NCBI RefSeq assembly: GCF_947568905.1
Contig: NC_079172.1
Location: forward strand, 64,790,001 to 64,854,000
Source of the DNA: Ostrea edulis
Taxonomy: Eukaryota
Reading direction: 5' to 3'
Length of the DNA: 64,000 nt
This document shows, piece by piece, positions 1 to 63,780 of this stretch; position 1 is the first letter of the stretch, and each line of letters opens with the position of its first letter. The position numbers and the translations under genes are program-made. Below the pieces are notes generated by a model. It ran no database searches. It was not told the origin of the DNA and saw only the letters and a list, made by a program, of their open reading frames with translations.

Positions 1-201
1 TGAATCTGTCAACATAAAACAATTGACTAAACATGGATGCAGGACTTAATAACGAGAATGAATTATTCAGAGTAATCGTTCTTCAGACTTTTATTGGACA
101 TCATTTCCTTATTGATTTTTGACATGTTTATGAGTTTACCTTCAGTATGTGGGACCCCTCTATCAACTGGACCAAAGTTTATACTTTGTATATATTGCTG
201 A

Positions 202-266
202 GTCCCGTACTGGGTTAGAATAGGTCCTTAGTACCCCTTGCTTGTTGTCTTTGGATGAGACCGCAT

Positions 267-299
<33 letters not shown>

Positions 300-324
300 C
301 AATAAAGATCCCTCCCTGCTTAAA
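202..324 (+). mobile_element. SINE fragment, same family as 63520-63780
   Basis: ggttagaataggtcct.agtaccccttgcttg...gtcacagcag.tgtggcacaataaagatccc is shared with the reverse complement of 63520-63780. Confidence 0.75.
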
Positions 325-1204
325 TTTATTTTAGCGTAAATGAAGGTTGTCTGTTTGTCTATCTGCAGCATAAACCATTGTCATAACCTTTGAACAATAC
401 AAGATAGCAGCATTAAAAAGTCAAGGTTAAAGCTTTGTGACTGGTCAAGGTCAACACGGTCAAGGTTATGTATCAAGGTCAGCATCAGATTTACCACAAT
501 TGAACTTGCTGAGAGGCATGGTGTTTCACAAACACTTTTTGTTCAACACATGAAATATGACACAGCTGTTAACTTCCCAGAGCAGTTATGTAACTTTGCT
601 ATTTCAATAGAATTTGTATGTCCTTTAGAGATCATTATAATGTAGGAAATGTCCTCCTGTAATTGTACTGAGCTCCACAGATGTGTAAAAATGAATAGCT
701 TTAATGGAAATTTTATAGTCCTAGTCAATTGAAGTGATGTAATAGATATTGACGTCCATCAGCTATTCGTGCCAGTTTAATTGTCTAGAGCAATGAAGCA
801 TTTAGCTCATAGCTTTATCATTTCAGTGTCTGAGAAAAGAAAGGGAAGCATTTATTTTTGTTTGATGTATTAGATTATTATGAAAGCTGATTGGTGAAAA
901 AAAAATTCATTGGGGACCATCATGTAAATATTCAGTGACCACCTGGTATTTATGTGGTGGCCACCAGATAATCATATGGTGGCTGTCAGAATAATTTTAT
1001 TTGGCAGCTTCCTTAAAATTTATTTGGTGATCTCCTCCAGAAATTTATGCGGCAACCACCATATCATTATATGGTGGCCATCAGAAACTTATTTGGTGGC
1101 TATGGGATAAAATATTTTTCTTATCTGGCACCAAACAGCTTCCTTAGCTTAGTTATGGCATAGTGGTATATTGTGTTTTATTAGGATGCAGTTTCCATTC
1201 GAGT

Positions 1205-2006
1205 TAATGGCTAGTTTTGTCTGTTTACAGAATACAGAGTTAACAGCTAGTCTTGTCTGTGTACAGGTTACAGTCTTATCTGTTTACAGGTTACAGTCTT
1301 GTCTGTGTACAGGTTACAGTCTTGTGTGTTTACAGGTTACCGTCTTGTCTGTTTACACTAGTATTGTCTGTTTACAGGTTACGGTCTTGTGTGTTTACAG
1401 GTTACAGTCTTGTGTGTTTACAGGTTACAGTCTTGTCTGTTCACAGGTTACAGTCTTGTCTATTTACAGGTTACAGTCTTGTCTATTTACAGGTTACAGT
1501 CTTGTCTATTTACAGGTTACAGTCTTGTGTGAATACATGCTACAGTCTTGTCTGTATACAGGTTACAGTCTTGTCTGTTTATAGGTTACAGTCTTGTCTG
1601 TTTACAGGTTACAGTCTTGTCTGTTCACAAGTTACAGTCTTGTCTGTTTACAGGTTACAGTCTTGTCTGTGTACAGGTTACAGTCTTGTCTGTTTACAGG
1701 TTACATTCTTGTCTGTGTACAGGTTACAGTCTTGTCTGTTTACAGGTTACAGTCTTGTGTGTTTACAGGTTAAGTCTTGTGTGTTTACAGGTTACATTCT
1801 TGTCTGTTTACAGGTTACAGTCTTGTCTATTTACACTAGTCTTGTGTGTTCACAGGTTACAGAGTTAATGACTAGTCTTGTGTGTTTACAGGTTACAGAG
1901 TTAATGACTAGTCTTGTGTGTTTACAGGTTACAGAGTTAATGACTAGTCTTGTGTGTTTACAGGTTACAGAGTTAATGACTAGTCTCGTGTGTTTACAGG
2001 TTACAG
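1205..2006 (+). repeat. 23/36-bp minisatellite built from the exon A splice acceptor
   Basis: Unit gtcttgtctgtttacag|gttaca, roughly 30 copies, last copy is the real junction. Confidence 0.9.
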
Positions 2007-2203
2007 AATACAGAAGGGATTATTTCTGATGGACATGGGAATTACTCAGAAGACAACAAGTGCACCTGGTTGGTGGATACCAGTAACCATAGTAACAGCT
2101 CCTTGTGGTTCCAGTTTCATCAGTTTTCCACCGAGTGTGGCTGGGATCATCTGTACATCTACGACGGAGACTCTGCCTTCGCTCCTTTATTGGCAGCTTT
2201 CAG
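2000..2203 (+). CDS. ATRN: ATRN exon A, CUB N-half
   Basis: tttacag|G TTA...TTC AG|gtgatt; LQNTEGIISDGHGNYSEDNKCTWLVD...TECGWDHLYIYDGDSAFAPLLAAF. Confidence 0.9.
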
Positions 2204-5200
2204 GTGATTAGTCTGACCCTGTTGTTTACTGATTTCATGGAAATTCTGATCATCAGTATCAGTAATCAAACATTTGATCATGTGCAAGAAAATATCCACA
2301 TGACGTGCTACATGATAATAGTTCATAGAACCAGACTGACCAAACCATATTTCACATTGGAATAGAGCTTTTTGTTAGGTTAGGTTCATATCAATCAATC
2401 TTGATGTAAAATATCCTATAGCGATAGCTGAATGAATAGAGAATTAACAACAACGAAAAAAAAAAGAATGCTAAAAGTTTATATCTCTAGTGTAATGAAA
2501 ATCGCACAAAAAGAAAAACATCTCTATTTAATTGCTACATCTCTATTTAATTGCTACATTGTAAATTTTTCTTGTAATAATCCTCTTATAGCATTGATGA
2601 ATTTTATAAAGGGTAAATTAGAACAACATTGTTTATTATACCTCAGCATGAAAATTCTATGCAACATGTAATCTGATTGGTCTAGACAGTCACGTGCAAG
2701 GGAGGACAAAACTTCATACCTCCCTCAAACATTACACCTTTCCATCATATTACACCCCTTCAGCAGCCTCGTGCATTTTCTATAAACATAGTTTATTGTG
2801 ACGTCACAATAAGTCCAAGTCTTCACTTCCATAGTTCGTAAGGCACAAGAGGAATATTTGTTTACACACGGTTTTCTGATACACAGTTATACCACCTGAT
2901 TTTTGTTGATACAAAAACTATGCAAGTAATCAGCATTTAAGGAAGGAAATACAAGAAATGGTTATCATATCACTGTATTTTGTTTTTTGTACCTTCCCAT
3001 GTGGTGTTACCATTAGGGCGATCTCAGCTACATACAATGTATAGATGAGCGGACTCCAATTTTTCAAATGCATTTTTGTAGCCTTGCTTTGTTTCGGTAT
3101 GATAAACAATTTATTGCATGAATGTTCGGGAGATATGAAGATTTATTTATCCAAGAAAGATCATATTCCCCTTGGGCGTTTCCCTCGAGGAATATGATGT
3201 TTCTTGGGTGAATAGATCTTCATATCATCCTCACTATCATGCAAAAGATGTGTAATGGTACAGAATCTTAATCTGAAACAAAGTGAATGAATATTTCAGA
3301 ACTCGCATAAAGTAATATATATTCAAGTTTGCTGCCAGCATTGAGATCTAACCAGAAGTCTAGAAATGATCAAGCTAATTACATATGTATAATCATTGGA
3401 TGTCAAACTTCCAGTTACATATATATAGACATAGTAATTATCTATATAGACATAGTAATTATCTATATAGACGTAGTAATTATCTATATAGACATAGTAA
3501 TAATATATAGACATAGTAATAATATATAGACATAGTAATTATCTATATAGACGTAGTAATTATCTATATAGACGTAGTAATTATCTATATAGACATAGTA
3601 AATATCTATATAGACGTAGTAATTATCTATATAGACGTAGTAATTATCTATATAGACATAGTAATTATCTATATAGACATAGTAATAGTAATTATCTATA
3701 TAGACGTAGTAATTATATATATAGACATAGTAATTATATATAGACATAGTAATTATCTATATAGACATAGTAATTATCTATATAGACGTAGTAATTATCT
3801 ATATAGACATAGTAATTATCTATATAGACATAGTAATAGTAATTATCTATATAGACATAGTAATTATCTATATAGACATAGTAATAGTAATTATCTATAT
3901 AGACGTAGTAATTATATATATAGACATAGTAATTATATATATAGACATAGTAATTATCTATATAGACATAGTAATTATCTATATAGACGTAGTAATTATC
4001 TATATAGACATAGTAATTATCTATATAGACATAGTAATAGTAATTATCTATATAGACATAGTAATTATCTATATAGACATAGTAATAGTAATTATCTATA
4101 TAGACGTAGTAATTATATATATAGACATAGTAATTATATATATAGACATAGTAATTATCTATATAGACGTAGTAATTATCTATATAGACGTAGTAATTAT
4201 CTATATAGACATAGTAATTATATATATAGACATAGTAATTATCTATATAGACGTAGTAATAATATATAGACGTAGTAATTATATATATAGACATAGTAAT
4301 TATCTATATAGACGTAGTAATTATCTATATAGACATAGTAATTATCTATATAGACATAGTAATTATCTATATAGACATAGTAAATATCTATATAGACATA
4401 GTAATTATATATATAGACATAGTAATTATCTATATAGACATAGTAATTATCTATATAGACATAGTAATTATCTATATAGACATAGTAATAATATATAGAC
4501 ATAGTAATTATCTATATAGACGTAGTAATTATCTATATAGACATAGTAATTATCTATATAGACATAGTAATTATCTATATAGACATAGTAATTATCTATA
4601 TAGACATAGTAATTATCTATAAGACATAGTAATTATCTATATAGACGTAGTAATTATCTATATAGACGTAGTAATTATCTATATAGACATAGTAAATATC
4701 TATACAGACATAGTAATTATATATATAGACATAGTAGAATTTTCCTGTTATAGTAAGTAAGATACTATAGACATAGTAGAATTTTCCTGTTATAGTAAGT
4801 AAGATGGCACAGTTAATCTTCATCATGTGTGTGCAAGCTACACTAACCCTAAAGCAATATTGAGGGGACTGTTTCCATGTGTCACATTAATGTGTCCTTA
4901 TCAACTTATCCAGGAATTGAAACAGGGAATATGTTGTGAGCTGTTACTATTTGTACTGAGTTTATCAACTTATCAAGGAATTGAAACCAGAAATACGCCG
5001 TGAGCAATTACTATTTTTAGAGGTAGAAAAACTAGAAAGTTTATTTTCTTCTGATACACAAAACAATTTCTTCAATCAGATTTGCTTCATCATCATTTGT
5101 ATTGTGTTATGAAAACAAAGACCTTGACTTCTCATCTGTCATCTTGTCTAGGTCGTGATCGATATTGCATTTCGTTAGGTGTACTCATTTCCAATAAACA

Positions 5201-8200: not shown

Positions 8201-11200
8201 TAATATTACACACAGGGTATTACTGTACAACATGTCAGGATTTAATATTACACACAGGGTATTACTGTACAACATGTCAGAATCTAATATTACACACAGG
8301 GTATTACTGTACAACATGTCAGAATCTAATATTACACACAGGGTATTACTGTACAACATGTCAGAATCTAATATTACATACAGGTTAGTTACTGTACATG
8401 TCAGGATTTAATATTACATACAGATTATTACTGTACAACATGTCAGGATTTAATATTACATACAGATTATTACTGTACATGTCAGGATTTAATATTACAT
8501 ACAGATTACTATACATGTCAGGATCTAATATTACATACAGATTATTACTGTACAACATGTCAGGATTTAATATTACATACAGATTATTACTGTACATGTC
8601 AGGATTTAATATTACATACAGATTATTACTGTACAACATGTCAGGATCTAATATTACACACAGATTATTACTGTACAACATGTCAGGATTTGATATTACA
8701 TACAGATTATTACTGTACATGTCAGGATTTAATATTACATACAGATTACTATACATGTCAGGATCTAATATTACATACAGATTATTACTGTACAACATGT
8801 CAGGATTTAATATTACATACAGATTATTACTGTACATGTCAGGATTTAATATTACATACAGATTATTACTGTACAACATGTCAGGATCTAATATTACACA
8901 CAGATTATTACTGTACAACATGTCAGGATTTGATATTACATACAGATTATTACTGTACATGTCAGGATTTAATATTACATACAGATTACTATACATGTCA
9001 GGATCTAATATTACATACAGATTATTACTGTACAACATGTCAGGATTTAATATTACATATAGATTATTACTGTACATGTCAGGATTTAATATTACATACA
9101 GATTATTACTGTACAACATGTCAGGATCTAATATTACACACAGATTATTACTGTACAACATGTCAGGATCTAATATTACATACAGATTATTACTGTACAA
9201 CATGACAGGATTTAATATTACATACAGATTATTACTGTACATGTCAGGATTTAATATTACATACAGATTATTACTGTACATATCAGGATTTAATATTACA
9301 TACAGATTATTACTGTACATGTCAGGATTTAATATTACATACAGATTATTACTATACATGTCAGGATTTAATATTACATACAGATTATTACTGTACATGT
9401 CAGGATTTAATATTACATACAGATTATTACTGTACATGTCAGGATTTAATATTACATACAGATTATTACTGCACAACATGTCAGTATTTAATATTACACA
9501 CAAATTATTACTGTACAACATGTCAGGATTTAATATTACATACAGATTATTACTGTACAACATGTCAGGATTTAATATTACCTACAGATTATTACTGTAC
9601 AACATGTCAGGATTTAATATTACATACAGATTATTACTGTACAACATGTCAGGATCTAATATTACACACAGGGTATTACTGTACAACATGTCAGGATCTA
9701 ATATTACATACAGATTATTACTGTACATGTCAGGATTTAATATTACATACAGATTATTACTGTACAACATGTCAGTATTTAATATTACCTACAGATTATT
9801 GCTGTACAACATGTCAGGATTTAATATTACATACAGATTATTACTGTACAACATGGCAGGATTTAATATTACATACAGATTATTACTGTACAACATGTCA
9901 GGATTTAATATTACATACAGATTATTACTGTACAACATGTCAGGATTTAATATTACATACAGATTATTACTGTACAACATGTCAGGATTTAATATTACAT
10001 ACAGATTATTACTGTACAACATGGCAGGATTTAATATTACACACAGATTATTACTGTACAACATGTCAGGATCTAATATTACATACAGATTATTACTGTA
10101 CATGTCAGGATTTAATATTACCTACAGATTATTATTGTACAACATGTCAAGATTTAATATTACATACAGATTATTACTGTACATGTCAGGATTTAATATT
10201 ACATACAGATTATTACTGTACTTGTCAGGATTTAATATTACATACAGATTACTATACATATCAGGATTTAATATTACATACAGATTACTATACATATCAG
10301 GATTTATACACACAGGTTATCATATATACTGTCATATAAATCTTTTCGCGTGTAAGTCACAGACCCCCTTTGCAGACAATGTTTATGCCCCTGGAATCAA
10401 AGATTTGGGGACATATAATTTAGGCACTCTCACAGTTTCAACCACCCTCCAGTAAATTAAGTATGATCAATTAATTGGATAATTAGTTAAATTATATTTA
10501 TGTCAGTTCATTGATATGAAGTTATGCTTATTGTTTTCACAGAACTGGCGGTTGCCCGAAAAACTGCTCAGGACAAGGGGATTGTTCAGGAGATGTTTGT
10601 AATTGTCACATGGGTTACCATGGAGATGACTGTAGTGAGGTCACATGTCCCAATAACTGCTCTAGCAATGGGGACTGTGTCTACAAACAGTGCCAGTGTC
10701 ATTCAGGATTCAAAGGTTCGTGTGGTGTCCTGATTCCTCTTCTAAACCAACATTTCAGAACGTTGGCTGGCTGACAGTGTACACACTAGTTGATTTTTAC
10801 AAATATATTTTTATTATTATGTAAAAAAAAAATTTCACGATTTAGCTCCCGATTATCTTGTTGAGTTGTTTGAATTTTGATTCTATGCTTCTTATCATCT
10901 GCATTCTGAATCAAATCACGATCTTAGATTACCGAAGTTTGACATGCAATTATTCAAGACCTCTTTACAATACTCAGGTGTGGACCTGTGGAACAAACTA
11001 CCCCAACACATATAGGGCTTTCTCAGCCTCAGTATTTGTGATTGTCATTGATATTTAATTATAACAAGTGATATAAATTGGGTTTGGTGGTGTGCTCTTG
11101 TGTTTGTGGTTTTGAGACTCTGATTTAAATGATAGTTTTTCTGTCATGTTAGCTCATGCAGTGGATAAAGTGCTGGGTTAATGACCCACAGATCCACCAG

Positions 11201-14200
11201 TCTTTTGTTCATATTTATTGCAATAATTTTTTATCCAAAATTGCATATTTTCTGCTTTATTTACTTATATACTTATTATATATATCATCATATCTTTCAT
11301 GATTGAATCATTTCTTGCTGATTTGAGAAACTCTATAAAGGTGTATGCCACCTTAATACCGTATAAGCAGAATTTTAACTAAGATTTAATTTTGGCATTA
11401 TTAGCGGCAGGGGCCTCTGTGGCCGAGTGGTTAGAGCATTGTGCTCAAAATCACACGGCCTCTCACCTCTGGTAAGTGTGGGTTTGAATCCCGCTCGCAC
11501 CGGTAAGTGAGAAAGTTTCCCAGTTTACTTTTGGAAGGTCGATGGTCCAGTGCTCCCACTGGACCAGAATTCCCTTTCGCCACTTTTTCAGGGAGTGGCG
11601 CGGCACAAATAATCACATGCTTTACAATTATTTCATCATATTATATATTATTTTACTCATTACACTTATTTTAGCATTTTGAATCAGTTACATTACTTAA
11701 TCATATCCAGCTACCATACCTAAACATTTCTTTCTGAAATAATAAGAAATTGATTTGTTTGATAAATTCTATTATGGAAATCAAAATTCAGATAATAAAT
11801 CATATAAACTTCATGATGCTACAGCCCTCAGTGAAAACATTGTGTACATTGACCGAAATGCAGATGTCACAAAACATCAATTCCAATTTATAGTCGTATC
11901 TCAACCATTCCCTATTAACATGATTAACAGTGATTAAATTTCCGTTTTTGTATGGAAGATTTTTGCAATTTGGATAGAATCAGATGTTTGAGAAGGTGGG
12001 GTTGACTGTAAAGCCAAACATAGATATTTTTTAATTTTAGACTGACTAGGGTCAGAAGCTACAAGTTTAGTGTCAAAATAGAATGGGTGCAGTCTTATGA
12101 GATTAGCATTTTTATACTGTTGCGCACCGAACTTCAAAGAAAATTAATTATTAAAATTGCTATGTCCATATCAATGGTGACCGACCGCATTGTTTATGAA
12201 ATATTCGAACTAAAATCAAACACATCAAAATCAAAATCTTGTAATCAACGAGTTTGGCCGCAAAAACAAACAATTGATGTATTCATATATACATTATACA
12301 TAATAATATGGCCAATTTAATTACCGGTCGGTTCTCTGCTTAAGAATTGACATTAATGTGGAAATGATAACACGATAATGAATAAGACTTTAAATGTTAA
12401 ACAATTGACCACAGCAGGGTAAACAGCTGACTGATGTACTTTATTACATAATCACCGACTTTTTTGCAGCCATAAATTACCTGAGGCTGTGACCAGCTCT
12501 GTGTTCACTGGAGCGACGCGAGATTTCCGGTCGCACGCGTTGACAAACAGATTTTGACTACATAAACAAACAGGCGATAATGTGTCACTGACAAAGGATT
12601 AAAAATACAACTTATTGCAAAAAGGGATTTTCGCCACTTTCAATTTTTTTCGCCATTTTTGAAAAAAATTCGCCATTGGCGAAAATGGCGAAGCCCAGCT
12701 CGAGCACTGCGATGGTCTCTTCCCAGGTACATTGTATCTGGGTTCTCTCTTCCACCAATAAAAACTAGGCGCCACCAGATAACTGAAAAAATTGTTGAGT
12801 GTGTCGGAAAACAGCTAAAACAAACAAACTATTAGCGGCAATGTTGAGTTCGAGATAACGGGGTTTGACTGTATTTCTAATATATCCCACTCAATAACCA
12901 GAAAATTCTTTTGACGTAAGCAGATGATATTAAATCTGATTGTGTTTCTAGGCAAGGACTGTAACTTTACTGCTGACAAGGCCTCCTGGGAACTGAACTT
13001 TCTACAGAGTGACCTCCTGGCTCGCGTGTCCGCAGGGGTAGCCATGGTGGGGGAGGATCTGTACCTTTTAGGGGGGTACTCCTTCAACAGGACACAAGAT
13101 TTCCTCATAAAGTGAGTAGTGGACATTACTGTGTAGTGGACATTACTGAATGTGAGTAGTGGACATTACTGAATGTGAGTAGTGGACATTACTGAATGTG
13201 AGTAGTGGACATTATTGTGTAGTGGACATTACTGAATGTGAGTAGTGGACATTACTGAATGTAAGTAGTGGACATTACTGTGTAGTGGACATTACTGAGT
13301 GTGAGTAGTGGACATTACTGAATATGAGTAGTGGTCAATACTGAATGTGAGTAGTGGAGATTACTGAATGTGAGTAGTGGTCAGTACTGAATGTGAGTAG
13401 TGGTCATTACTGAATGTGAGTAGTGGACATTACTGAATGTGAGTAGTGGACATTACTGAATGTGAGTAGTGGACATTACTGTGTAGTGGACATTACTGAA
13501 TGTGAGTAGTGGTCAATACTGAATGTGAATAGTGGACATTACTGAATGTGAGTAGTGGACATTACTGAATGTGAGTAGTGGACATTACTGAATGTGAATA
13601 GTGGACATTACTGAATGTGAGTAGTGGACATTACTGAGTGTGAGTAGTGGACATTACTGAATGTGAGTAGTGGACATTACTGTGTAGTGGATATTACTGA
13701 ATGTGAGTAGTGGTCATTACTGAATGTGAGTAGTGGACATTACTGAATGTGAATAGTGGACATTACTGAATGTGAATAGTGGACATTACTGAATGTGAGT
13801 AGTGGACATTACTGAATGTGAGTAGTGGACATTACTGAATGTGAGTAGTGGTCATTACTGAATGTGAGTAGTGGACATTACTGAATGTGAATAGTGGACA
13901 ATACTGAATGTGAGTAGTGGACATTTGTATAAATTACTGACTGATTAAACTACTGTAACATGTTCCAGTGCTGTGTTTAGACAAGTTTTGACGAGTATCT
14001 TTCTGTAGATATGTGTTCACAATCTTGTTTATCTAACAAACTACATCCTTGTTTCATTTTTCTGTAGATATAAGATGTCATCAGGGAATTTAGAGGCTGT
14101 AAATCCGGTTTCCTCGGAGAACCCCCCTCCGCGATACGGACACTCTGTCGTGGCCTATCAGGTATGTGCCCCTATTGACGGTTTCTGTTTGTCATTATAA

Positions 14201-17200
14201 GTACATGTAGCAGATCTTTAAATTCTTATTCATGTACAAAACGTGTAACATGATTATTCCTGAGAAAAGTTTCAGATTTCTCCAGATTGTTGCATTAGAT
14301 ACTTAAGAGTGGTCTGGATAAGATTTACGAATTTTTGAGTTTGTGAAATGTGGCATTAAAGGCCCACTGTGGCTCAAAAATTAAGTTCTTTCTTTGTGTG
14401 TTTTGCAATGCAAAAAGATAGAGCTGTTAAAATATAACCATATTGAATATTTGAAATACGCGACACAATCCGTACAGATAGATCCTTTGTGGTTAGCCTC
14501 TAATCATTAACATTTAATAACATAATTAATACGAAACATGATACAGCTTAAAGACATTTATAAATCATCCGGAATTAAGAAATCAGTTTACAGATTGGAT
14601 AGATTTTAACATGTGTGTGTGTATCACATGATAGTGTTTGACAGTAACTGGTGCAGAGAAAACATTGTAGCGCGAGATTAATAGAATCCTTCATTAGTAC
14701 GAGTGTGGGATAGAGAAATTCCACCGAGGGGACAAGATTCGCAGTCTAGGACGAGGCTTTGCCGAGTCCTAGACAGCGAATCTTGTTCTAGAGGTGGAAT
14801 TTCCCTATCCCACACGAGTAAATAATGAAGGATTATTTTTCTCACATTTTACCTACAGTTTAGTGCATAAATTTGGGAGCTTTGAGAAAATTCTAAATTA
14901 TCAAAATCCTCATTTCAACTTCGATGCAAAAATTAATTAGATAGACAGAAAGAGCATACCCGAAAATGGTTTACACTTTAAGTGTAAACTAAAAAACCCA
15001 AGGTTGTCCAACAGAAAGCTATACACATTAAAATTTAAAGATAACAAAGCAAAATAATTTTACTTTACCGTGTAACGTAAATCTTCACCGTGTAACGTAA
15101 ATCATAGAAAATATATGATGTCACAATCAAATGACGTCGCAGCAGTGTGAGACAGAAAAATCTCACATGGCTGTCTCACATGGGTAAAGTCGATCTCACA
15201 CTGGTGATAATGTGAGATAAATCTGTCTTGAGTACGATTGCTTTGTTTCATTCACCTTTTACTGATTTGGTAAGAACTTGTGGTCTTCTCACTGGATGTA
15301 AACGCTGGACGTCGAGCAGCAATGATTTGGATTTCTCTGCGTGTACTTGACATTAGGAAGGGGAGAGGGTTGGAATTGATAACATTTTTGTGCTGGGCTA
15401 AGATTAAATTGTTTACTTTATAACTGGAATTGTTAACTTTTGTACCTTGTCAATGCTTTGAAAGTTAAGTTAATATTTTCAAGAATGAAATAAAAATTTC
15501 ATAAGTCCTGTTTAAATCTTACTTACCCTGTTTTTACATATGACTAAGACGGAAGCAGGAATTCGTAAACTTTGGTTTTGATTTACAGAACAAACTGTAT
15601 ATGTTTGGAGGAGTTCTGGGAGACGAAACATCGAAAGATCTGTGGACGTATGATACGATGACACAGACCTGGGTGAGGCAGCACTATAACCGGACAATTC
15701 CCATGGGAGTGGCCGGTCACTCGGCACATGTCGTCAAGGGAGTCATGTACATTCTGTTTGGGTACAGTCCCTTGTATGGCTACCAGAACAGGATTCAGGA
15801 ATACAATATAGGTAAGGACATTGCAGGATAGTTAGTAATGTAGAAATACAGAGATTGTGCTCTCCTTAGTAATGTAGAAATACAGAGATTGAACTCTCGT
15901 TAGTAATGTAGAAATACGGAGATTGAGCTCTCGTTAGTAATGTTGAAATACAGAGATTGAGCTCTCGTTAGTAATGTAGAAATACAGAGATTGAGCTCTC
16001 CTTAGTAACGTAGAAATACAGAGATTGAGCTCTCCTTAGTAATGTAGAAATATGGAGATTAAGCTCTCATTAGTAACGTAGAAATACAGAGATTGAGCTC
16101 TCCTTAGTAATGAAGAAATACAGAGATTGAGCTCTCCTTAGTAATGTAGAAATATGGAGATTAAGCTCTCATTAGTAACGTAGAAATACAGAGATTGAGC
16201 TCTCCTTAGTAATGAAGAAATACAGAGATTGAGCTCTCCTTAGTAATGAAGAAATACAGAGATTAAGCTCTCCTTAGTAATGTAGAAATACAGAGATTGA
16301 GCTCTCGTTAGTAATGTAGAAATACAGAGATTGAGCTCTCGTTAGTAATGTAGAAATACAGAGATTGAGCTCTCGTTAGTAATGTAGAAATACAGAGATT
16401 GAGCTCTCGTTAATAAAGTAGAAATACAGAGATTGAGCTCTCATTAGTAATGTAGAAATACAGAGATTGAGCTCTTGTTAGTAAAGTAGAAACTTTTTCC
16501 TATTATTCAACACTACCTGTTGGTTGTAATAGTAGAACTGAAAGTAAGGACATCTGTTGGTTGTGAGATTAAAACTGAAAGTAAGGGCACCTGTCAGTTT
16601 TGTGAGGAGTATTCTGTGGTGTCAGAGGTGATGGCATAGAATTCCAGATTCTGTAAGAAAACTGTGTTAGTTTTGACAAAGTATAGCATCAATGTTTTGT
16701 GAAATTCATTATGAATAGCATACTTTTCATTTGTTTTCAGCGAATGAAAGCTGGATTGTGCCACGGACCTATGGTGCCCTGGTTCAGGGAGGGTATGGCC
16801 ACTCCAGTGTGTATTACCCAGCCCTAGGTAAAATCTACATTTATGGGGGATACCATGCCCGCAGTACCTCGAACTATGACCTCACTGATCAGCTGTACTC
16901 GTTTGAGCCGGCCACAAGAACTTGGTAAGTGTTCGATAGAAGGTCCCTCAGAGGAATTAAAAACTGATTATAAACCATAAAAATTTTGAAATATTTTTTG
17001 AAAAATCTGTTACAAATTTATTAGAAGTATGCACTATAAGGATTGAAATTTAAGAGAAATCTCGAGATTTGGTATATCTTTTTTCAAACTTCAATGTTTT
17101 TTAGACCATTGTTACATCATTTCTTATTGTTCGTCATTATAATGCAAGCATTTTATCGTGTCTGGTTTTTTTGTTGTTTTTTTTTACCAAAAACGTGCTG

Positions 17201-33900: not shown

Positions 33901-36900
33901 ATTGTGAGAGATGTGTAGAGGGTTACTATGGCGATGCCAGTAATGGAGGGAACTGTACGGGTGAGTAGTCGGTAATATTTTACACTGTCATGTTTTCTTC
34001 TCTACTTCATTTATCTACAAATAAATAGGTCCACTCGACAGTCTATGCATTTCACTGACAATAGGTGTTCAGTATATGTACGAAAATAATTCTAGCAAAT
34101 ATAATTGTGTACATATGAATATTGAATGTACTTATTTACTGGGAATTGTGTATAGAATACTTGTTTAAGATAGTTAGAATATAAGTACTAGTTACATATT
34201 ATCTTTCATAATTAAATCATTTCATGCTGATTTTAGAAATTCTTTCAAGGTGTAGTGAGCTAATGTTAATTTTCATTGCTGTTGTGCTGTAGTTTGGAAG
34301 CTTATGAATGACCAGTCATGTTTGGTAGGAGAGCGTTTACTCAATGCTTTAATTTGTAGCTTGTCAGTGTAACGGACAGGCAGATTCCTGTGACCGGGTG
34401 ACAGGGGCGTGTTACTGCAGGACGAGGGGGGTCATTGGAGATCGATGTGACAAGTAAGTGTTGTACACACTAACCACAATGCATCAGGGTTTCCTGTGAC
34501 TCATTTACTCATTAAACAACTCAAAATGAAAAAATGCAATGCTATAAAGAACAAACAAACCGTTATATACCCTGGATGGGAAGAACAGGTGCTTGTTGTA
34601 TATGGTTTGTCTGTCTACATTAGAGGAACAGGTGCTTGTTGTGTTTGTCTATCTACATTAGAAGAACAGGTGCATGTTGTGTTTGTCTGTCTACATTAGA
34701 AGAACAGGTGCTTGTTGTGTTTGGTTTGTCTATCTACATTAGAAGAACAGGTGCTTGTTGTGTTTGTCTATCTACATTAGAAGAACAGGTGCTTGTTGTG
34801 TTTGTCTATCTACATTAGAAGAACAGGTGCTTGTTGTGTTTGGTTTGTCTATCTACATTAGAAGAACAGGTGCTTGTTGTGTTTGTCTATCTACATTAGA
34901 AGAACAGGTGCTTGTTGTGTTTGTCTGTCTACATTAGAAGAACAGGTGCTTGTTGTGTTTGGTTTGTCTATCTACATTAGAAGAACAGGTGCTTGTAGTG
35001 TTTGTATATCTACATTAGAAGAACAGGTGCTTGTTATACCCCCCGAACGAAGTTCTGGGGGGTATATAGGAATCACTCTGTCTGTCTGTCCGTCCGTCCG
35101 TCCGTCTGTGCAGATTCGTGTCCGGGCCATAACTTCTTTGTTCTTTGACTTAGGCATACCATATTTGGCACACAGGTAGATCACCATGAGATGATGTGTT
35201 GAGTACCTTCATGACCTCTATATGACCTTGACCCTTGACCTCAAGGTCAAAATTAAAGGTTTTTTACAATGGATTCGTGTCCGGGCCATAACTTCTTTGT
35301 TCTTTGACATAGGCATACCATATTTGACACATGAGTGTATCACCATGAGACGATGTGTCATGTACCTTCATGACCTCCATATGACCTTGACCTCAAGGTC
35401 AAAATTAAAGGTTTTTACAATGGATTCATGTCCGGGCCATAACTTCTTTGTTCTTTGACTTAGGCATACCATATTTGACACATGAGTGTATCACCATGAG
35501 ACAATGTGTCAAGTACCTTCATGACCTCTATATGACCTTGACCCTTGACCTCAAGGTCAAAATTAAAGGTTTTTTTACAATGGATTCGTGTCCGGGCCAT
35601 AACTTCTTTGTTCTTTGACATAGGCATACCATATTTGACACATGAGTGTATCACCATGAGACAATGTGTCGAGTACCTTCATGACCTGTATATGACCTTG
35701 AACTTTGACCTCAAGGTCAAAATTGATTATAGGGTTTTGACATAGTCATACCATAAGACATGGGTGTATCACCATGAGACTATGTGTCATGTACATTCAT
35801 GACCTCTTTATGACCTTGACCTTTGATCTCAAGGTCAAAATTATAGGTTTATGCCATGGATTTGTGTTCGGACTATATCTTCCATTTTCTTCTACAAATG
35901 CATACCATATTTTTACACTCAGGAAAGAGGTAATTTATACCTATTAACAACACCCTTTGGGAGATTGTGGTAAGCGGGGGGTATTCTTAGTGAGCATTCC
36001 TCACAGTACATCTTGTTGTGTTTGTCTATCAACATTAGAAGAACAGGTGCTTGTTGTGTTTGTCTGTCTATATTAGAAGAACAGGTGCTTGTTGTGTTTG
36101 GTTTGTCTATCTACATTAAAAGAACAGGTGCTTGTTGTGTTTGCCTATCTACATTAGAAGAACAGGTACTTGTTGTGTTTTTCTGTCTACATTAGAAGAA
36201 CAGGTGCTTGTTGTGTATGGTTTGTCTGTCTATATTAGAAGAACAGGTGCTTGTTGTGTTTGTCTGTCTACATTAGAAGAACAGTGTCTACATTAGAAGA
36301 ACAGGTGCTTGTTGTGTTTGTCTGTCTACATTAGAAGAACAGGTGCTTGTTGTGTTTGTCTGTCTACATTAGAAGAACAGGTGCTTGTTGTGTTTGTCTG
36401 TCTACATTAGAAGAACAGGTGCTTGTTGTGTTTGTCTGTCTACATTAGAAGAACAGGTGCTTATTGTGTTTGGTATGTTAACTTTGCCTCAGCTTTATAA
36501 CTGTTACAGATTTTGTATTTAACATGCATACTTTACAGTGGAAGTTTTTACAAGAGATACCAAGGTCAAAGACATTTTGACCTTGAAATCAGTTGATATC
36601 TGTAATTAACAAACATAATTTGCTTTTCCCTTTGTTGCGTATATTATACAACATTTGACAGGCATGATGAACCTTTGTTGTGTATATTGTACAATGCTAT
36701 ATTTTACAGGTGTGATGAACCTTTGTTGTGTATATTATACAATGCTATATTTTACAGGTGTGATGAACCCCATAAATATTTTGGGAATCCTAAAACTGGA
36801 ACATGTTACTGTAAGTAAAAAATGTTGTTCCCAGACTTTCAAAACATTTTGAAAATTATTGTTACCAATTTTACTGTGCTACTGATGAATCAAATTTCGA

Positions 36901-37662
36901 ATTGATTTTCAACATGCTACTTTCACAGATAATCTGGTAACAGACTACCAGTTCACCTTTAACCTTTCAAAATCGGAGGATAAGTCCTACACACAGATCA
37001 ACTTTATGAACATCCCATCCTCAGTAAGTCTGCTTCTGATCATAAACAACTTCATCAACATCCCATTCTCAGTAGAAACAGACTTCTGATGTTGAAATTG
37101 ATATGAAAGTAAATGTTCGTGTTGGACAAATCAATGTAGGCCATATAAACATTTATTATATGCAGCTTGATTTATTCTTTTAGTTTGTTCTATCATATTT
37201 ATAGTAACAGTTTCTCAAGAGAAGAACATTAAATTTTTATATTATAATGGTGACAAAGAAGCAATTTTGTAAATTTTAGAAAAATATTACGTATTATTTT
37301 ATTGACCTTGTAGAGTGAACGGGACGTTGACTTTAAAGTGAATTGTTCGGGTATAGCCTTTCTGAACATAACAATGAAGAAAAGTAAGTGCTTAAACTAT
37401 ACGGTCACTGTATTTTCTCAGTGTTGTGTTTTGCATTACTTCTATAAACTTACAATGGATTAATTGTCTATTCTTAGAATCTCATGGTGACCACGAAACA
37501 ACGATCGTCAAACAACATTCGTGCAATTACTTCCGGGCCAAGTTCGACCATGGGGAATATTCCTTTGGAGCCAAGGAAAACACGACATTCCTTGTTTATG
37601 TGTATGGGTTTAAAACCCCATTCTGGCTACAGGTTTGTTTGCCCTTTATAATCTTGAAGTTC

Positions 37663-37742
<80 letters not shown>

Positions 37743-40700
37743 GTAGATAAACTTTTAATAAGTTAAAAAAAATTGAAAGATTGATACTAAACATGTGAAA
37801 ACCATTATGTTTACCGCCGGACTCTATTTCACAGATCTCCTTCTCCCAGTTTCCTAAAATCGACTTGGTCCACTTCTTTGTGACATTCTTCAGGTAAGAT
37901 TCACTTAATCTTCAGGTAAAATTAACTTAATCTTGAGATAAGATTAACTTAACCCTTTCTCTACCGGCACATTTTAAAGGTTTTCCAAGGCTAAATGACA
38001 GTATTTTTAAAATTTACTCAAATATATTATGTACGCTGATTTGGGGTAGGCATGTGACATATAATTGTGTTAGGAATTTGACAGAGAACAATTTTTTTTA
38101 TGAAGTTTGTCATGGTATCCCATGATGTCAAAGATGTCTCTGGGGTCAAAGGTCATATAAGTGCACATTTTTTTCAATCTTTTTTTTTGTGAAGTGTATA
38201 TATTATGACCCCTCTCACTAGATTAGAGTCAAAAATAGGAAATTCTAAATGTATGAACTGATGTGTCTTTTGAAATACTTCAAAAACATCACAATCAAAT
38301 TAATCAATTTTATTGACAAACATTTAACATTTTTGGTTGTTAAGTAACAACACACATCGTTCAATTTTGACCATAATTTGCCTTTCTGCATCCATTCGAC
38401 ACAATTTAAACTTAACTAAATTGTATAAAGGATAGTAAATGTCACATTGTTTTAATAGTATAATCTGTAACTAGATCTTAATCATTTTAAAATGTTTTTA
38501 ACAACAGATATGATAAAGATAATGAATAGAATTAAGGTGAAAGGTCATAAAGTGCAAACTTCGTACTTTATTTACGTATCCATCATTTTCTAATGATATG
38601 ATGTTTTGCCATTAAGTTCCACTAAATAGAATAAATATTGCAACATGAAAACAAAATTTTTTACTGTTACTCTGAAAATAACTTCATATTTTGTATTCAA
38701 ATATATTTGGTTGCTAAGCAACAACACCATAATAAATGTTATCAAAAAGTAATATCTGTTTTTCCTCCCCAAGTTTAATGTATACGAATGTTCAAGTCCT
38801 TACTTTCAATCACTTGATTTAAATGTACTTGCATCATATTCGACAAAAATGTTCTTATATTCAACCTCTTAAAGGCCATAAGTGCCGAGCATAGGCCTAA
38901 ATTTTGCAGCCCTTCACCGGGAGTGGTGACATCTCCATATGATTGAAATATTCTCAAGAGGGACTTTAAACAATATAAAATCAATCAATCAACCTCTTAA
39001 AACCTATTTCTAGACATAATTCTTGATGCTGGGTTGTTCTGATAGGGGCATGTGTTAACCAATATCTGTCTATCGACCGAAACTTCACAGCAGACATGTA
39101 TAAGATAATGCCAAAAAATCTAAAACAAAAAGTATTTCTTAAGGAGGCTCTTTACACCCTGAAATTAGAATCTCATGGTGACCACGAAACAACGATCGTC
39201 AAACAACACTCGTGCAATTACTTCTGGACCAAGTTCGACCATGGGGAATATTCCTTTGGAGCCAAGGAAAACACGACATTCCTTGTTTATGTGTATGGGT
39301 TTAAAACCCCATTCTGGCTACAGGTTTGCCCTTTATAATCTTCAAAACAGTACAAATTGATTTAATCATGAAAGATATGATGATAGCGAGCCAGCACAAA
39401 GTGCTGGCGCGTACTGCGAGCTCTAATGACTAGAGCGCGGGAAATAATCCGAGCTAAATCTAAACCTCTAACAAGTAAAACTTTACATTAGACATACGTA
39501 ATATGGCATCAAATACAAATTGTGTATAATCGACTGCAAACCACAAATCTGATTAAAATACTAAATTCTCAATAGGAATTTATTATTCTAACAAGACAAA
39601 AGGTTAAATTGTTAGAATATGTGAGGGAGCACAGGTACTGAATTAGTGCTGTTTAAAAAATTACAAAAAATCGATGGAACTTGGTTGGATTGAAGAATTT
39701 TTTTTAAAATCTTTATTTTTTTTTTGCGACTAAAAATAATAAGTACTTGAATCCATTTCCTTTAAACGTGTCCGGTAATGCGAACCACGATGAGTAGAAA
39801 AAAGGAAAGTAGAGGCAGTCGACTGCTAAGAACATAGTTACAATTCAGAACATTTCGCGTGTCACAGTGAAGGCAGCAGAAATGAAATGTATATATAGCA
39901 TAAAAATATTTCAATCACATTAATGTATACATCTTTTAATGATTTTTAATATAAAACCCTGGGAGAAAACTTAACATGAAGCCACGCTCTCTCAAACGGT
40001 AGCACCGTCAACATATTATGTAATAGGTATGTATGCCAAAAAGGCAGAAAATATGCAAATTTGGATAAAAACATAATTTGCACACAAATTATTTCAACAC
40101 ATATGAACAAAAGGCTCAGGCAGATTTGAACTCGAGATCTGTGGTTCACCAGCCCAATGCTTTAACCACTGAGCTACGATGATAGACAAACAAATCGATC
40201 GATACAAATAATTTCACAAAACATTTAAATTGCCGTCTTGTGACGTAGTATCATAAAGAGTATAAGCTTTAGTATTGTCTGCAGAGCTTTTGAATACTCA
40301 ATTGGCTCTGTAAATGGTTTCTATAATTAAGACTTTCTAAAAGTTATGCATTTAATTATTATGAAATTTTATCAGAGGTAATTATAGTACACATTTGATA
40401 AATGTTTTAGATGCACAGCAAGATTACTTTTGGTAAAGATAATCTTATTATAATGCATTTTATTATTCGTTTTAAACTGGAAATCGTCATAATATCGGTA
40501 CTTTAGAACTAGTAATGCCTGTATAATTCCTCTTCAGTGGGATGCTGCAAACTTTCTTTGGAAGCGCATGACAATCCTTCCCTCCTACATAAAACCATCT
40601 GAGCATAACAGTGGCAACACAGATGGAGAAAACCAAATCTTCTCTCAAAAACGGCTTCATAAAATCTACAGTTCTCTGAACCATCGGGTTCCAAGTCAAT

Positions 40701-46700: not shown

Positions 46701-49700
46701 ATGTCATCGTATTACATCCGAGATCTAAGTCGAGTGTGCGAGACATTCAAGGAGTGCCGATTGGTGAGTTGTTGCTCCTTGTCAGAGATTCTCATATGAG
46801 TTAGTGTTCCCCGTTAAAGATTCTGGTGTGGGTTGGTGCTCTCTGTCGGTGATTATTGTGCGAGTTTGTGTTCCATGTTAGACTTTCTCGTGTGGGTTGG
46901 TGTTCCTTGTCAGAGATTCTTATGTGAGTTGGTCTGTCAGTGATTATCATGCGAGTTTGTGTTCCCTAGCTGTCAGAGATTCTTGTGTGAGTTTGTGTTC
47001 CCTGTCAGAGATTCACGTGTGAGTTAGTGTTCCTTGTCAGAGATTTTCATGTGAGTTGGAGTTCCTTGTCAGAGATTCTCCTGTGGGTTGGTGTTCCCTG
47101 TCAGAGATTCTTGTGTGGGTTAGTGTTCCCTGTCAGAGATTCTCATGTGAGTTGGTGTTCCCTGTCAGTGATTTTCGTGTGAGTTGGTGCTCTCTGTCAG
47201 AGATTTTTGTGTGGAATAGTGTTCCTTGTCAGAGATTCTCGTGTGGGTTGGTGTTCCTTGTCAGAGATTCTCGTGTGGGTTAGTGTTCCTTGTCAGAGAT
47301 TCTCGTGTGGGTTGGTGTTCCTTGTCAGTGATTCTCATGCGAATTGTTGCTCCATGTGAGTGAGTTTTCTCGTTTTCCATTTTCAGTTGCTTCCTGTCTC
47401 TGCTGATAATAGCCGCGGTACTGTACAAAATCAAACACAAGTACGACATCTACCGCAGAAGGCAGGTGAGTGGTGCAGGGCAAGTGAAAAGTGTTACACT
47501 TTAAAGTAACTTCATACCATCTTTATTTTAAGATGTTTCAAAACAACAGTGTAGATGATTGTGTCCATGTGGCCATAAAACAAAATCAGTTTCAGATGGC
47601 TTGATAGAAGAACGTTTGCTTTAACCTGAGAGGTCATTTAAAAAGTGTGCAGTCATTTGATATCCCGCTTAACGCATGTGTGGAGTCAATTAATATCCCA
47701 CTTTAACACATGCATTTTGTGTCATAATTCAGTTGGATTTTCTGTTGAAAATTGAAAGAAAGTAAGTAATTTTGATGAGTTTTGTTTAGGGAAAGGATGA
47801 GTGGAAACATTGAATAACACTAAACTCACAAACTGTCATGTTCAAACTGTGTAAATATATCAGATCTGTGCTTGATGCCTGCACTCTGTATTTTAGGATT
47901 GAAAAACTGCATGCAAAGACCCATTTTCTGTCAGTTTGATCAAATTACGGTGTAAAGGATGTACTAGTAATAGCATAGTTTAATGATAAATGAGTAGGAA
48001 GATGCCCTGTTTTCAACTCTTTGTTTTGTCTGATCACCCGTAGTCCGGCGTCTGTAAACTTAACATTTTTGACTTCTTCTCAAAAACCACTGGGCCAATT
48101 TCAACCAAAGTTGACACAAAGCATCCTTAGGTAAAGGGGATTCTAAACTGTTAAAATGAAGGGCCAGACCACCTTCCAAGGGGAGATAATCAAGAAAAGG
48201 TAAAAATAGAGTAGGGTCATTAAAAATTTTCTTCTCAAGAACCACTGGGCCAGAAAAGATGAAATTTATAGATAAGCTTTATTAGGTAGTGCAGATTTTA
48301 AATTGTTAAAATCATAGCCCCCTGGGGAAGGGGGTGGCCACAATAGGGGATCAAAGTTTTACATAGAAATATATAGGAAAAATATTTAAAAATCTTCTTC
48401 TCAAGAACCACTGAGCTAAAAAGCTGAGATTTATATGAAAGCATCTTGATATATTGCAGATTCAAGTTTGTTGAAATCATGGCCCCTGGGGGTTGGATGG
48501 GGCCACGATAGGGGATCAAAGTTTTGCATACAAATATATAGGGAAAATCTTTAAAAATCTTCTTCTCAAGAACCACTGAGCCAGAAAAGCTGAGATTTAC
48601 ATGAAAGCTTTCAGACATAGTGCAGATTCAAGTTTGTTCAAATCATGGCCCCTGGGGGTAGGATGGGGCAACAAGGGGGATCAAAGTTTTACATGCAAAT
48701 ATATAGGAAAAATCTTTAAAAATCTTCTCAAGAACCATTGGGCCAAAGAAGTTGACATTTACATGAAAGCTTTCTGACATAGTGTAGATTCAAGTTTGCA
48801 AAAATCATGGTCTCCGGGGGTAGGTTGGGGCCATAATAGGGACTACGGTTTTACATGCAAATATATATGGAAAGTCTTTTGATATGGGCCAAGGTGACTC
48901 AGGTGAGTGATGTGGCCCATGGGCCTCTTGTTTTCTATTGTAAAATGCATTTTGTGACATTCCTGATATTATCTTTGTTTTGCTGATATACAATAGAAAC
49001 TGTACCTGCTTCTTATGAACAGCATTTTAAGAAATGTTGAAGTCAGAACTTGGAATACTTTGTCTTATCTTACACAAAATAAGTGTCATAATATTAAGAG
49101 ACACCCTGTATATCATCTCCTGCACAGAACAAGTGCCATGATATTGTGAGACACCCTGTATATACATCTAAGTGTCATGATATTATGAGACACCCTGTAT
49201 ATACATCACCAGCACAAAATAAGTGTTGTGATATTTTTGGACACCCTGTATATACATGTACATCTCCTGCACAATAGCCCATAATTAATGTGTACCCATG
49301 ATTAATGATGGGGTCAACAAATCAGTCTTTAACAACTTGGGTAGCTTGTATATTGTGACACACATTTGTTAATAGGTCTAATTTTTATGTGGCTAGGCTA
49401 TTTAGGCCTAATTAATTCTAAGTTTGGAAAAAAGAATACATCAAGGTCAACATTTTTGTTGCATATTATACACACGATGTGCATTTTTTTCTCAAAAAGG
49501 CGGGTGTGTATTAAATACGAATGCGTATTATATTCAGCCACATACAGTATTTACATTTTACAATATTCACACTTTACATTATTCACACTTTATATTCACT
49601 TTTTACATTATTTACAGTTTACATTATTCACATTTAACATTGTTCACACTTTACATTATTTACACTTTATTATCCATAGTACAATTTACATTATTCACAG

Positions 49701-63409: not shown

Positions 63410-63519
63410 GCAGGCATTAGCACGTTTAAGAACCCTCACTGCTACAGCCCTGAGCGCTATGCATAGGCCTAGATTTTGCAGCCCTTCACCAACAGCTGGT
63501 AACATCTCAATATGAGTGA

Positions 63520-63780
63520 TTGTTTATTGTTTAATGTCCCTCTCTCGAATATTTCACTCATATGAAGACGTCATCACTGCCGGTGAAGGGCTGCAAAATT
63601 TAGGCCTATGTTCGGCGCTTACGACCTTTGAGCAGGGCGCGCGGGATCTTTATTGTGCCACACCTGCTGTGACACGGGTTCTCGGTTTTAGCGGTCTCGT
63701 CCGAAGGACCGCCCCATTTAGTCGCCTCTTACGACAAGCAAGGGGTACTGAGGACCTATTCTAACCTGGATCCCAAGGGA
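63520..63780 (-). mobile_element. 5'-truncated SINE inserted antisense into the first SINE
   Basis: Reverse complement matches 202-324 and 38874-38988. Confidence 0.8.

What the first reader, a model, noticed from the sequence alone, without database searches (positions are those of the whole stretch)
39169..39557. Duplicated exon W could be a terminal exon for secreted attractin
Seen: a 98% identical copy of exon W (3 changes: one silent, R to W, A to T) lies downstream of exon X with a usable AG. Splicing V to W' keeps the frame, and reading past its donor gives ...PFWLQVCPL* (stop 39336-38), which removes the transmembrane and cytoplasmic parts. An ATTAAA lies at 39552-57. Splicing X to W' gives ...FFRISW*, also truncated. 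Established: human soluble attractin arises by splicing at about this point to a LINE-1-derived terminal exon. Inference: possible independent, transposon-assisted origin of a soluble isoform. It may simply be a dead pseudo-exon.
Basis: partly seen in the sequence, partly recalled or inferred. Interest (0 to 1): 0.75.

Follow-up and report, generated by a model that had tools for sequence, protein, structure and literature searches.

The report
Young intronic copy of attractin exon
An oyster attractin gene holds a real, very recent 178-base copy of one of its exons in the next-but-one intron, wedged between transposon remains. It looks like a tolerated pseudo-exon, and nothing obtainable here shows that it makes a secreted form of the protein.

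Summary
Exon W (37478-37632) has a 98% copy, W' (39169-39323). Pfam confirms an attractin-family gene; V+W encode the end of the last ectodomain module, and X+Y encode the membrane span.

The copied block is only 37474-37655 -> 39165-39342. It is single-copy, it sits between high-copy repeats, and it abuts the terminus of a tRNA-derived SINE. An independent DNA run has an error-free contig over W' and its right flank, so an assembly artefact is unlikely.

The secreted-isoform reading has no support. I could not test it with RNA, because my one run search returned DNA runs only. The sequence leans against it:
- The W' acceptor lost its pyrimidine tract.
- Its donor is intact.
- Poly(A) hexamers in the intron occur at chance frequency.
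- W' lies after X, so a membrane-free product needs W and X skipped. The simpler X->W' join stops after four codons.

Caveat: in one run, W' letters sit on W's own left flank, so the three "diagnostic" letters may not be diagnostic.

The scan noted a similar tolerated splice-site decoy in this genome's anillin gene, but not this copy.

The parts
37314..37383 (+). Exon V (3' part), ending in phase 1. It encodes part of the attractin GBD-like domain.
   Evidence: Open frame SERDVDFKVNCSGIAFLNITMKK followed by gtaagt. The relatives' ORFs P0001/P0002 carry the same peptide.
37478..37632 (+). Exon W, 155 nt. This is the original exon and encodes the end of the attractin GBD-like domain.
   Evidence: Pfam PF24972 GBD_ATRN, 53.7 bits, profile positions 65-112 of 117. 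Relatives keep R and A/T at the changed residues.
37474..37655 (+). Source block of the duplication: 4 nt of upstream intron, exon W and 23 nt of downstream intron.
37835..37893 (+). Exon X, 59 nt. It encodes the first half of the membrane span (IDLVHFFVTFF).
39165..39342 (+). Duplicated block holding W'. It is a single-copy island between repeats.
   Evidence: Alignment A1. Raw-read depth is about 1 here, against 10-3400 in the flanks. X2 contig rec 11 covers 39165-39384 with 0 differences.
39169..39323 (+). W', the exon-equivalent copy, with AG at 39167-68 and GT at 39324-25.
   Evidence: Pfam GBD_ATRN gives 51.0 bits, 2.7 bits below W.
39336..39338 (+). TAA reached when the W' donor is read through (…WLQVCPL*).
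39179..39181 (+). TGA reached when X is spliced to W' (…FFRISW*). It lies 142 nt upstream of the W' donor.
39552..39557 (+). ATTAAA hexamer, inside a transposon piece nested in the SINE.
   Evidence: Hexamer frequency in the intron equals the chance expectation.
39331..40190 (-). tRNA-derived SINE, with head near 40190 and terminus at about 39331-39343. A ~630-nt nested insertion (39386-40016) splits it.
   Evidence: Weak Rfam tRNA match at 40119-40177, 21.2 bits, E 0.42, below the gathering score. Other copies lie at 11135-11341 and 34200-34250. Many reads and contigs join 39383-85 to 40017-48.
38700..39164 (.). Left-flank repeat of about 15-90 copies. It holds a nested, very abundant 115-nt element (38874-38988) with a 13-nt target-site duplication.
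   Evidence: Depth table and joints 38860->38989. Direct repeat TCAACCTCTTAAA at 38861 and 38989.
47387..47465 (+). Exon Y, the second half of the membrane span plus KIKHKYDIYRRRQ. The X-Y intron is 9.5 kb long.

Best explanation
W' is a very young, DNA-level local copy of exon W. It carries 4 nt of upstream and 23 nt of downstream intron. It was pasted 1.7 kb downstream in the same orientation, into a transposon-rich stretch of the X-Y intron.

Both junctions lie in short homologies. The left junction shares TTAG. On the right, about 14 nt (CCCTTTATAATCTT) also align with the terminus of the adjoining SINE. From this I infer repair of a break, or a replication template switch, that used the nearby exon as filler template. 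I do not infer retroposition or transposon capture.

Functionally W' is most likely a tolerated pseudo-exon that the spliceosome mostly ignores because the copy did not bring a pyrimidine tract. When it is used, the expected product is V-W-X-W'-Y, which stops four codons into W' and should be degraded. It is not a dedicated exon for secreted attractin.

Shown: the duplication, its limits, its repeat context, its presence in another DNA run, and the consequences for the reading frame. Inferred: the mechanism of origin and the lack of function.
For: Extent and identity of the copy. Nothing else from 36900-37900 recurs in the intron.

No spliced V-W junction lies at the left edge, and there is no poly(A) tail, target-site duplication or terminal inverted repeat around the block. 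This argues against retrocopy or transposon insertion.

W' is at single-copy depth while both flanks are high-copy. This argues against mobilised capture.

The right edge coincides with the SINE terminus defined by two other copies.

X2 has a contig over 39165-39384 with 0 differences. Its graph breaks at 37503 and 39165, which implies two entries into the shared path.

The acceptor is weakened: pyrimidines at -12..-4 are 0.56 against 0.78 for W and X, with GAAA at -8..-5 and upstream AGs at -24, -27 and -38.

The X->W' stop is shown. Poly(A) hexamers are at chance frequency.

The W' changes move away from the family profile (51.0 against 53.7 bits). The R that changed is kept in all four relatives.

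Three changes, 1 silent and 2 replacement, fit neutral drift.
Against: No RNA was examined, so silence is inferred and not observed.

W' keeps the whole exon body and a donor identical at +1..+5 to a constitutive exon. It also has a plausible branch point, tttAc at -15. Some inclusion is therefore quite possible.

Only two other SINE copies define the terminus, so the homology at the right junction could be chance.

Contigs of X1 and X2 show only the W' letters, which the simple model does not predict unless the assembler dropped the W version twice.
Confidence: 0.65

Rival explanations
1. Poison exon. W' is recognised at a measurable rate after X, giving V-W-X-W'-Y. The 155-nt insert shifts the frame and stops at 39179-81, so the transcripts are degraded. 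W' would then lower attractin output, either as a mildly harmful young variant or as a regulated switch.
For: The exon body, and so any splicing enhancers, is 98% that of a constitutive exon, and the donor is the same at +1..+5. An AG and a candidate branch point are present. The stop lies 142 nt before the W' donor.
Against: The pyrimidine tract is lost. No RNA evidence is available.
Confidence: 0.2
2. W' acts as an alternative last exon, with cleavage after the ATTAAA. It would give either V->W' (full ectodomain plus VCPL) or X->W' (ectodomain plus an 11-residue hydrophobic stub plus RISW). This would be a secreted attractin that arose independently of the human L1-based one.
For: The frame and stops are as stated. 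W ends the last ectodomain module, GBD_ATRN positions 65-112 of 117, so the truncated protein would be a complete ectodomain. The human precedent is real. A stop in a last exon would escape degradation.
Against: The acceptor is weak and the donor intact. From general knowledge, U1 binding at a good donor suppresses nearby poly(A) sites. The ATTAAA is at chance frequency and lies 214 nt after the TAA. The V->W' route needs two good exons skipped. The copy is too young for selection to have shaped it. R>W falls at a conserved residue.
Confidence: 0.06
3. Assembly artefact. W' would be a piece of the second haplotype, or a mis-join, and would not be present in the real chromosome.
For: W and W' differ by about 1.7%, which is in the range I would expect for allelic differences in oysters (my own knowledge). 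In X1 the W' letters sit on W's left flank.
Against: Only 178 nt are shared and both flanks are unrelated to W's flanks. X2 holds W' with its right flank at 0 differences and shows two entries into the shared path. The X1 contig stops exactly where the W and W' right flanks diverge, which points to a branch. X2 could, however, be the sample the assembly came from.
Confidence: 0.04
4. Transposon capture. A Helitron- or Pack-type element picked up exon W and carried it to the new site.
For: W' is embedded in transposon remains, and a GC-rich hairpin lies at 39389-39407.
Against: W' is at single-copy depth. There are no terminal inverted repeats or target-site duplication around the block. The flanks belong to different repeat families with very different copy numbers. 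The hairpin belongs to a separate insertion nested in the SINE. The copy landed only 1.7 kb away, in the same orientation.
Confidence: 0.05

Closest known systems
Human ATRN soluble isoform made by an L1-derived terminal exon (Tang et al. 2000, as described in PMC3554611 and bioRxiv 10.64898/2026.01.30.702498)
   Same: It is the same gene family. An intronic insert near the membrane-span exons could in principle end the message before the cytoplasmic part, and any poly(A) signal would lie in transposon-derived DNA.
   Different: In human the L1 supplies the exon end and the isoform is documented. Here the candidate exon is a copy of the gene's own exon and no transcript is known. It also lies after the exon that starts the membrane span, one intron too far, so a clean ectodomain needs two exons skipped.
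Cryptic last exons and pseudo-exons (intronic AG...GT segments that are mostly skipped)
   Same: W' is an intronic segment with AG and GT, a stop on inclusion and transposon-rich surroundings.
   Different: Most pseudo-exons are chance sequences. This one is a 98% copy of a constitutive exon, so the exon body and donor are of proven quality and only the acceptor tract is poor.
Tandem exon duplication giving mutually exclusive exons (Kondrashov and Koonin 2001; Letunic et al. 2002; from my own knowledge, not checked here)
   Same: It is an intragenic duplicate of one exon, with the same length and phase.
   Different: The copies are not adjacent, because exon X lies between them. Swapping W' for W would also drop X and break the frame into Y.
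Templated (filler-DNA) insertions at repaired breaks, or microhomology-mediated template switching
   Same: A short, same-orientation copy of sequence from under 2 kb away. Short homologies sit at both junctions, and there is no target-site duplication.
   Different: At 178 nt it is at the long end for filler DNA. The mechanism is inferred from the junctions alone.
Splice-site decoy repeat in this oyster's anillin gene (scan note s1-292101)
   Same: It is the same genome. A young local duplicate of exon-edge sequence lies in an intron and is reported to be skipped by the cell.
   Different: That case is a tandem array of acceptor regions. This one is a single dispersed copy of a whole exon. 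I did not check that note.

Membership tests
Attractin family gene (ATRN/ATRNL1-like) | CUB, EGF, kelch beta-propeller, PSI repeats, laminin/attractin EGF and GBD-like domain in order, then one membrane span | tested here: met
   Pfam hits along the + strand: CUB at 1980-2204, EGF at 10520-, Beta-prop_ATRN-LZTR1 at 15544- and 16719-, PSI at 27335-, 31279-, 31906- and 32321-, EGF_LMN_ATRN at 33141-, and GBD_ATRN on W and W'. The membrane span is in X+Y. A C-type lectin domain was not looked for.
Alternative/cryptic last exon giving a soluble receptor (human ATRN-L1 type) | Intronic 3' splice site that is actually used | not testable with these tools
   No RNA run was offered. The sequence shows an AG with a poor pyrimidine tract.
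Alternative/cryptic last exon giving a soluble receptor (human ATRN-L1 type) | Cleavage/poly(A) site after the exon, with transcripts ending there | tested here: inconclusive
   ATTAAA is at 39552, but the hexamers occur at chance frequency in the intron. Transcript ends could not be examined.
Alternative/cryptic last exon giving a soluble receptor (human ATRN-L1 type) | The product lacks the membrane span but keeps a complete ectodomain | tested here: inconclusive
   V->W' meets this, because GBD_ATRN is complete through profile position 112 of 117. X->W' keeps 11 hydrophobic residues of the span.
Mutually exclusive duplicated exons | Adjacent copies that can replace each other without changing the frame | tested here: not met
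   Exon X lies between the copies, and V-W'-Y is out of frame in Y.
Poison exon / pseudo-exon | AG...GT-bounded intronic segment whose inclusion brings a premature stop | tested here: met
   AG at 39167-68 and GT at 39324-25. Inclusion after X stops at 39179-81.
Poison exon / pseudo-exon | Measurable or regulated inclusion, and conservation | not testable with these tools
   No RNA was available. Run X21, from another species, laid nothing on the exons, which proves nothing.
Transposon-captured gene fragment | The fragment lies inside one element with defined ends and occurs in several copies | tested here: not met
   W' is at single-copy depth. The flanks belong to different repeat families, and there are no inverted repeats or target-site duplication.
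Processed (RNA-mediated) copy | Spliced exon junctions, a poly(A) tail and a target-site duplication | tested here: not met
   Intron bases are kept on both sides. There is no V or X sequence attached, no A-run and no flanking direct repeat.
Assembly artefact (haplotype duplicate) | Homology continues into both flanks, and the copy is absent from independent data | tested here: not met
   Homology ends 4 nt and 23 nt beyond the exon. X2 contig 39165-39384 is identical to the window.

The most novel reading that the evidence does not exclude
W', with the transposon DNA behind it, is used as a cryptic last exon from V or from X. The oyster would then secrete an attractin ectodomain. That would be a second, independent origin of soluble attractin, this time seeded by a self-copied exon next to a SINE instead of by an L1.
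Probability: 0.06. Interest if true: 0.6.

Novelty: new member of a known kind. Interest (0 to 1): 0.2.

Why it matters
As it stands this is a small, clean example of how a whole exon can be copied into a neighbouring intron and then sit there as a near-perfect decoy. The same gene has several other local duplications of exon edges. The genome therefore looks prone to such events and could serve to study how spliceosomes ignore high-quality decoys.

It would matter more if RNA showed use of W'. That would give either a new route to a secreted receptor, convergent with human ATRN, or a young poison exon segregating in a natural population.

The practical point for any follow-up is that the three "diagnostic" letters may also occur at W itself. 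Tests should therefore rest on junctions and flanks.

Tried and rejected
- Run search with kind 'any' on 38950-39750. It gave 20 DNA holders from 8 studies and no RNA run. Kind 'rna' on exonic sequence would have been the better choice.
- The ~0.5 share of words in those holders is not evidence for W'. Most of that stretch is high-copy repeat.
- X21, another species from the same study, laid nothing on the exons. There is therefore no information on the age of the copy.
- Protein word search with the W' frame. It returned only four genomic ORFs from related species, with no fragment from this species and no transcript-like product.
- The 12-kb contig of relative P0004 could not be read because no DNA is held. 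Only one GBD_ATRN-bearing call is recorded on it.
- ARAGORN found no tRNA. Rfam gave only a weak tRNA match for the SINE head.
- Tang et al. 2000 (PMC18552) is not held. I used two papers that describe it.
- I did not use the large representative-protein search.
- I did not build or type a spliced full-length protein, so I could not look up annotated isoforms of this gene.
- Retrocopy, Helitron/Pack capture and a larger tandem duplication later broken up were each considered and rejected for lack of their hallmarks.

Full report
**What is there**

The window carries, on the + strand, a gene of the attractin family. Pfam finds these domains in order:
- CUB at 1980-2204.
- Teneurin-type EGF at 10520-10771.
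- The attractin/LZTR1 beta-propeller at 15544-15828 and 16719-16925.
- PSI repeats at 27335-, 31279-, 31906- and 32321-.
- A laminin/attractin EGF at 33141-.

The exon in question scores as the end of the attractin GBD-like domain: PF24972, profile positions 65-112 of 117, 53.7 bits.

The local exons are as follows:
- V ends at 37383.
- W is 37478-37632.
- X is 37835-37893.
- Y is 47387-47465.

Joined, they read ...NITMKKKSHGDHETT...PFWLQ / ISFSQFPKIDLVHFFVTFF / SCFLSLLIIAAVLYKIKHKYDIYRRRQ. W therefore closes the ectodomain, and X plus Y hold the membrane span.

**The observation**

- Block 37474-37655 recurs at 39165-39342 in the same orientation, with three substitutions and one GTTT indel in the intron part.
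- The substitutions are T>C (His, silent), C>T (Arg>Trp) and G>A (Ala>Thr).
- AG and GT flank the copy.
- V->W' keeps the frame, and read-through ends at TAA 39336-38.
- X->W' ends at TGA 39179-81.
- ATTAAA is at 39552.
- Nothing else from 36900-37900 recurs in the 9.5-kb X-Y intron, even with 7-nt seeds.

The event copied about 180 nt and no more: 4 nt of upstream intron, the exon and 23 nt of downstream intron.

**Context**

Reads and contigs of four DNA runs were laid on 37300-40299. Only 37300-37899 and the W' bin 39200-39299 are at single-copy depth. Everything else from 37900 to 40299 is repeat, at 10 to 3400 reads per bin per orientation in a run read at low coverage.

To the right, W' abuts a tRNA-derived SINE on the minus strand.
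- Its head is near 40190. Rfam gives a weak tRNA match at 40119-40177.
- A ~630-nt nested insertion at 39386-40016 splits it. Many reads and contigs from other copies join 39383-85 to 40017-48.
- Two other copies in the window, at 11135-11341 and 34200-34250, place its terminus at about 39331-39343.

To the left lies a different repeat of lower copy number. It holds a very abundant 115-nt element with a 13-nt target-site duplication.

**Origin (inferred)**

- There is no spliced V-W junction, A-run, target-site duplication or inverted repeat around the block. A processed copy and a transposon insertion are therefore both unlikely.
- Single-copy depth argues against a mobilised captured fragment.
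- The left junction shares only TTAG.
- The last 14 nt of the shared block (CCCTTTATAATCTT) also align with the SINE terminus in the two other copies (alignment A3).
- I read this as a templated repair or template-switch event at a break next to the SINE end, using the exon 1.7 kb upstream as template.
- This rests on two extra SINE copies and could be coincidence.

**Is it real DNA?**

Run X2 has a 220-nt contig over 39165-39384 with no difference from the window. The contig coming from W's own left flank stops at 37503. Those are the positions where a 31-mer graph must break if two different left flanks enter one shared path.

Run X1's contig stops at 37637, the last base shared before the indel, which points to two right flanks there as well. 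A haplotype mis-join would also share its flanks with W, and this copy does not. I put the artefact reading at about 4%, noting that X1 or X2 could be the assembly's own sample.

**An unexplained point**

In X1, the only contig over exon W is joined to 338 nt of W's unique left flank yet carries exactly the three W' letters. In X2 the only path through the exon also carries W' letters, at about 1.7 times the depth of its neighbours. The raw-read run X22 has one read with the reference letters on W.

There are two possible explanations:
- The contig builder dropped the W version twice.
- C/T/A also segregates at W itself, either because W' was copied from that allele or by gene conversion.

Four related species have Arg at the first changed residue, and Ala (three) or Thr (one) at the second. 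The reference W letters are therefore ancestral.

**Function**

I could not test expression.

The sequence argues against a dedicated role:
1. The copy did not bring W's pyrimidine tract. Positions -8..-5 are GAAA. Pyrimidines at -12..-4 are 0.56, against 0.78 for W and X. AGs lie at -24, -27 and -38, which leaves only a branch point about 15 nt from the AG.
2. The donor is the same as W's at +1..+5, so splicing onward to Y is more likely than read-through and cleavage.
3. AATAAA and ATTAAA occur 12 and 13 times in the intron, against 11.7 and 12.1 expected.
4. W' lies after X. The simple path X->W' stops after four codons. If W' is internal, that message should be degraded. If W' is terminal, the product keeps an 11-residue hydrophobic stub. 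A clean ectodomain needs both W and X skipped.
5. With about 1.7% divergence the copy is too young to have been shaped by selection. Its two replacements lower the fit to the family profile by 2.7 bits.

Against that, the exon body and donor are those of a constitutive exon, so low-level inclusion would not surprise me.

**Comparison with what is known**

The human precedent is correctly recalled. [quoted passage not shown]

W' resembles that only in place and gene family. It fails the test for mutually exclusive exons, because it is not adjacent to W and the frame breaks into Y. It fits the formal definition of a pseudo-exon or poison exon.

The scan's notes describe other local duplications of exon edges in this same gene (s1-302331, s1-302143, s1-302045). 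They also describe a skipped splice-site decoy array in this genome's anillin gene, where the genome is called the flat oyster (s1-292101). I did not verify those notes.

**Verdict**

The duplication is real, young and of a known kind. The secreted-isoform idea is untested and, on sequence grounds, unlikely at about 6%. Poison-exon use is possible at about 20%. A silent pseudo-exon is the most likely reading at about 65%. Interest is low to modest.

Noticed in passing
window 37300-37637 (run X1): In one public DNA run, the contig joined to exon W's own left flank carries the three W' letters. In a second run only the W' version of the exon appears in contigs. This may be an allele at W, gene conversion or an assembler effect. 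Either way, the three letters may not distinguish W from W'.
   Followed up: partly
window 39331-40190 (minus strand); also 11135-11341 and 34200-34250: A tRNA-derived SINE family. The copy next to W' is split by a ~630-nt nested insertion at 39386-40016, which most other genomic copies lack.
   Followed up: partly
window 38861-39001: A very abundant 115-nt element (38874-38988, thousands of copies by read depth). It is flanked by a perfect 13-nt target-site duplication, TCAACCTCTTAAA. Other copies of the host repeat show the empty site (joint 38860->38989). A related piece lies at 63513-63636 on the minus strand.
   Followed up: partly
window 37663-37741: An (TA)n microsatellite of about 80 nt starts 30 nt after exon W's donor. 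Reading through W's donor would run into it as a long (IY)n tail, whereas W' stops after four codons because of the GTTT deletion.
   Followed up: no
window 34450-36520: The intron upstream holds several tandem arrays: 38/43-nt units at 35976-36516, ~159-nt units at 35077-35912 and a 119-nt periodic frame at 34450-35100. A 48-nt duplicate of an acceptor region at 36646-36741 was noted separately by the scan.
   Followed up: no
proteins P0001, P0002 (relatives): In related oysters the V-W intron is short and free of stops, so a single ORF runs through V, the intron and W. In this genome the intron is 94 nt and is not open in frame.
   Followed up: no
window 39389-39407: A perfect 8-bp GC-rich hairpin (GCCAGCAC aaa GTGCTGGC) at the left end of the nested insertion. 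It sits in a segment present at several hundred reads of depth, so it may be the terminus of another mobile element.
   Followed up: no
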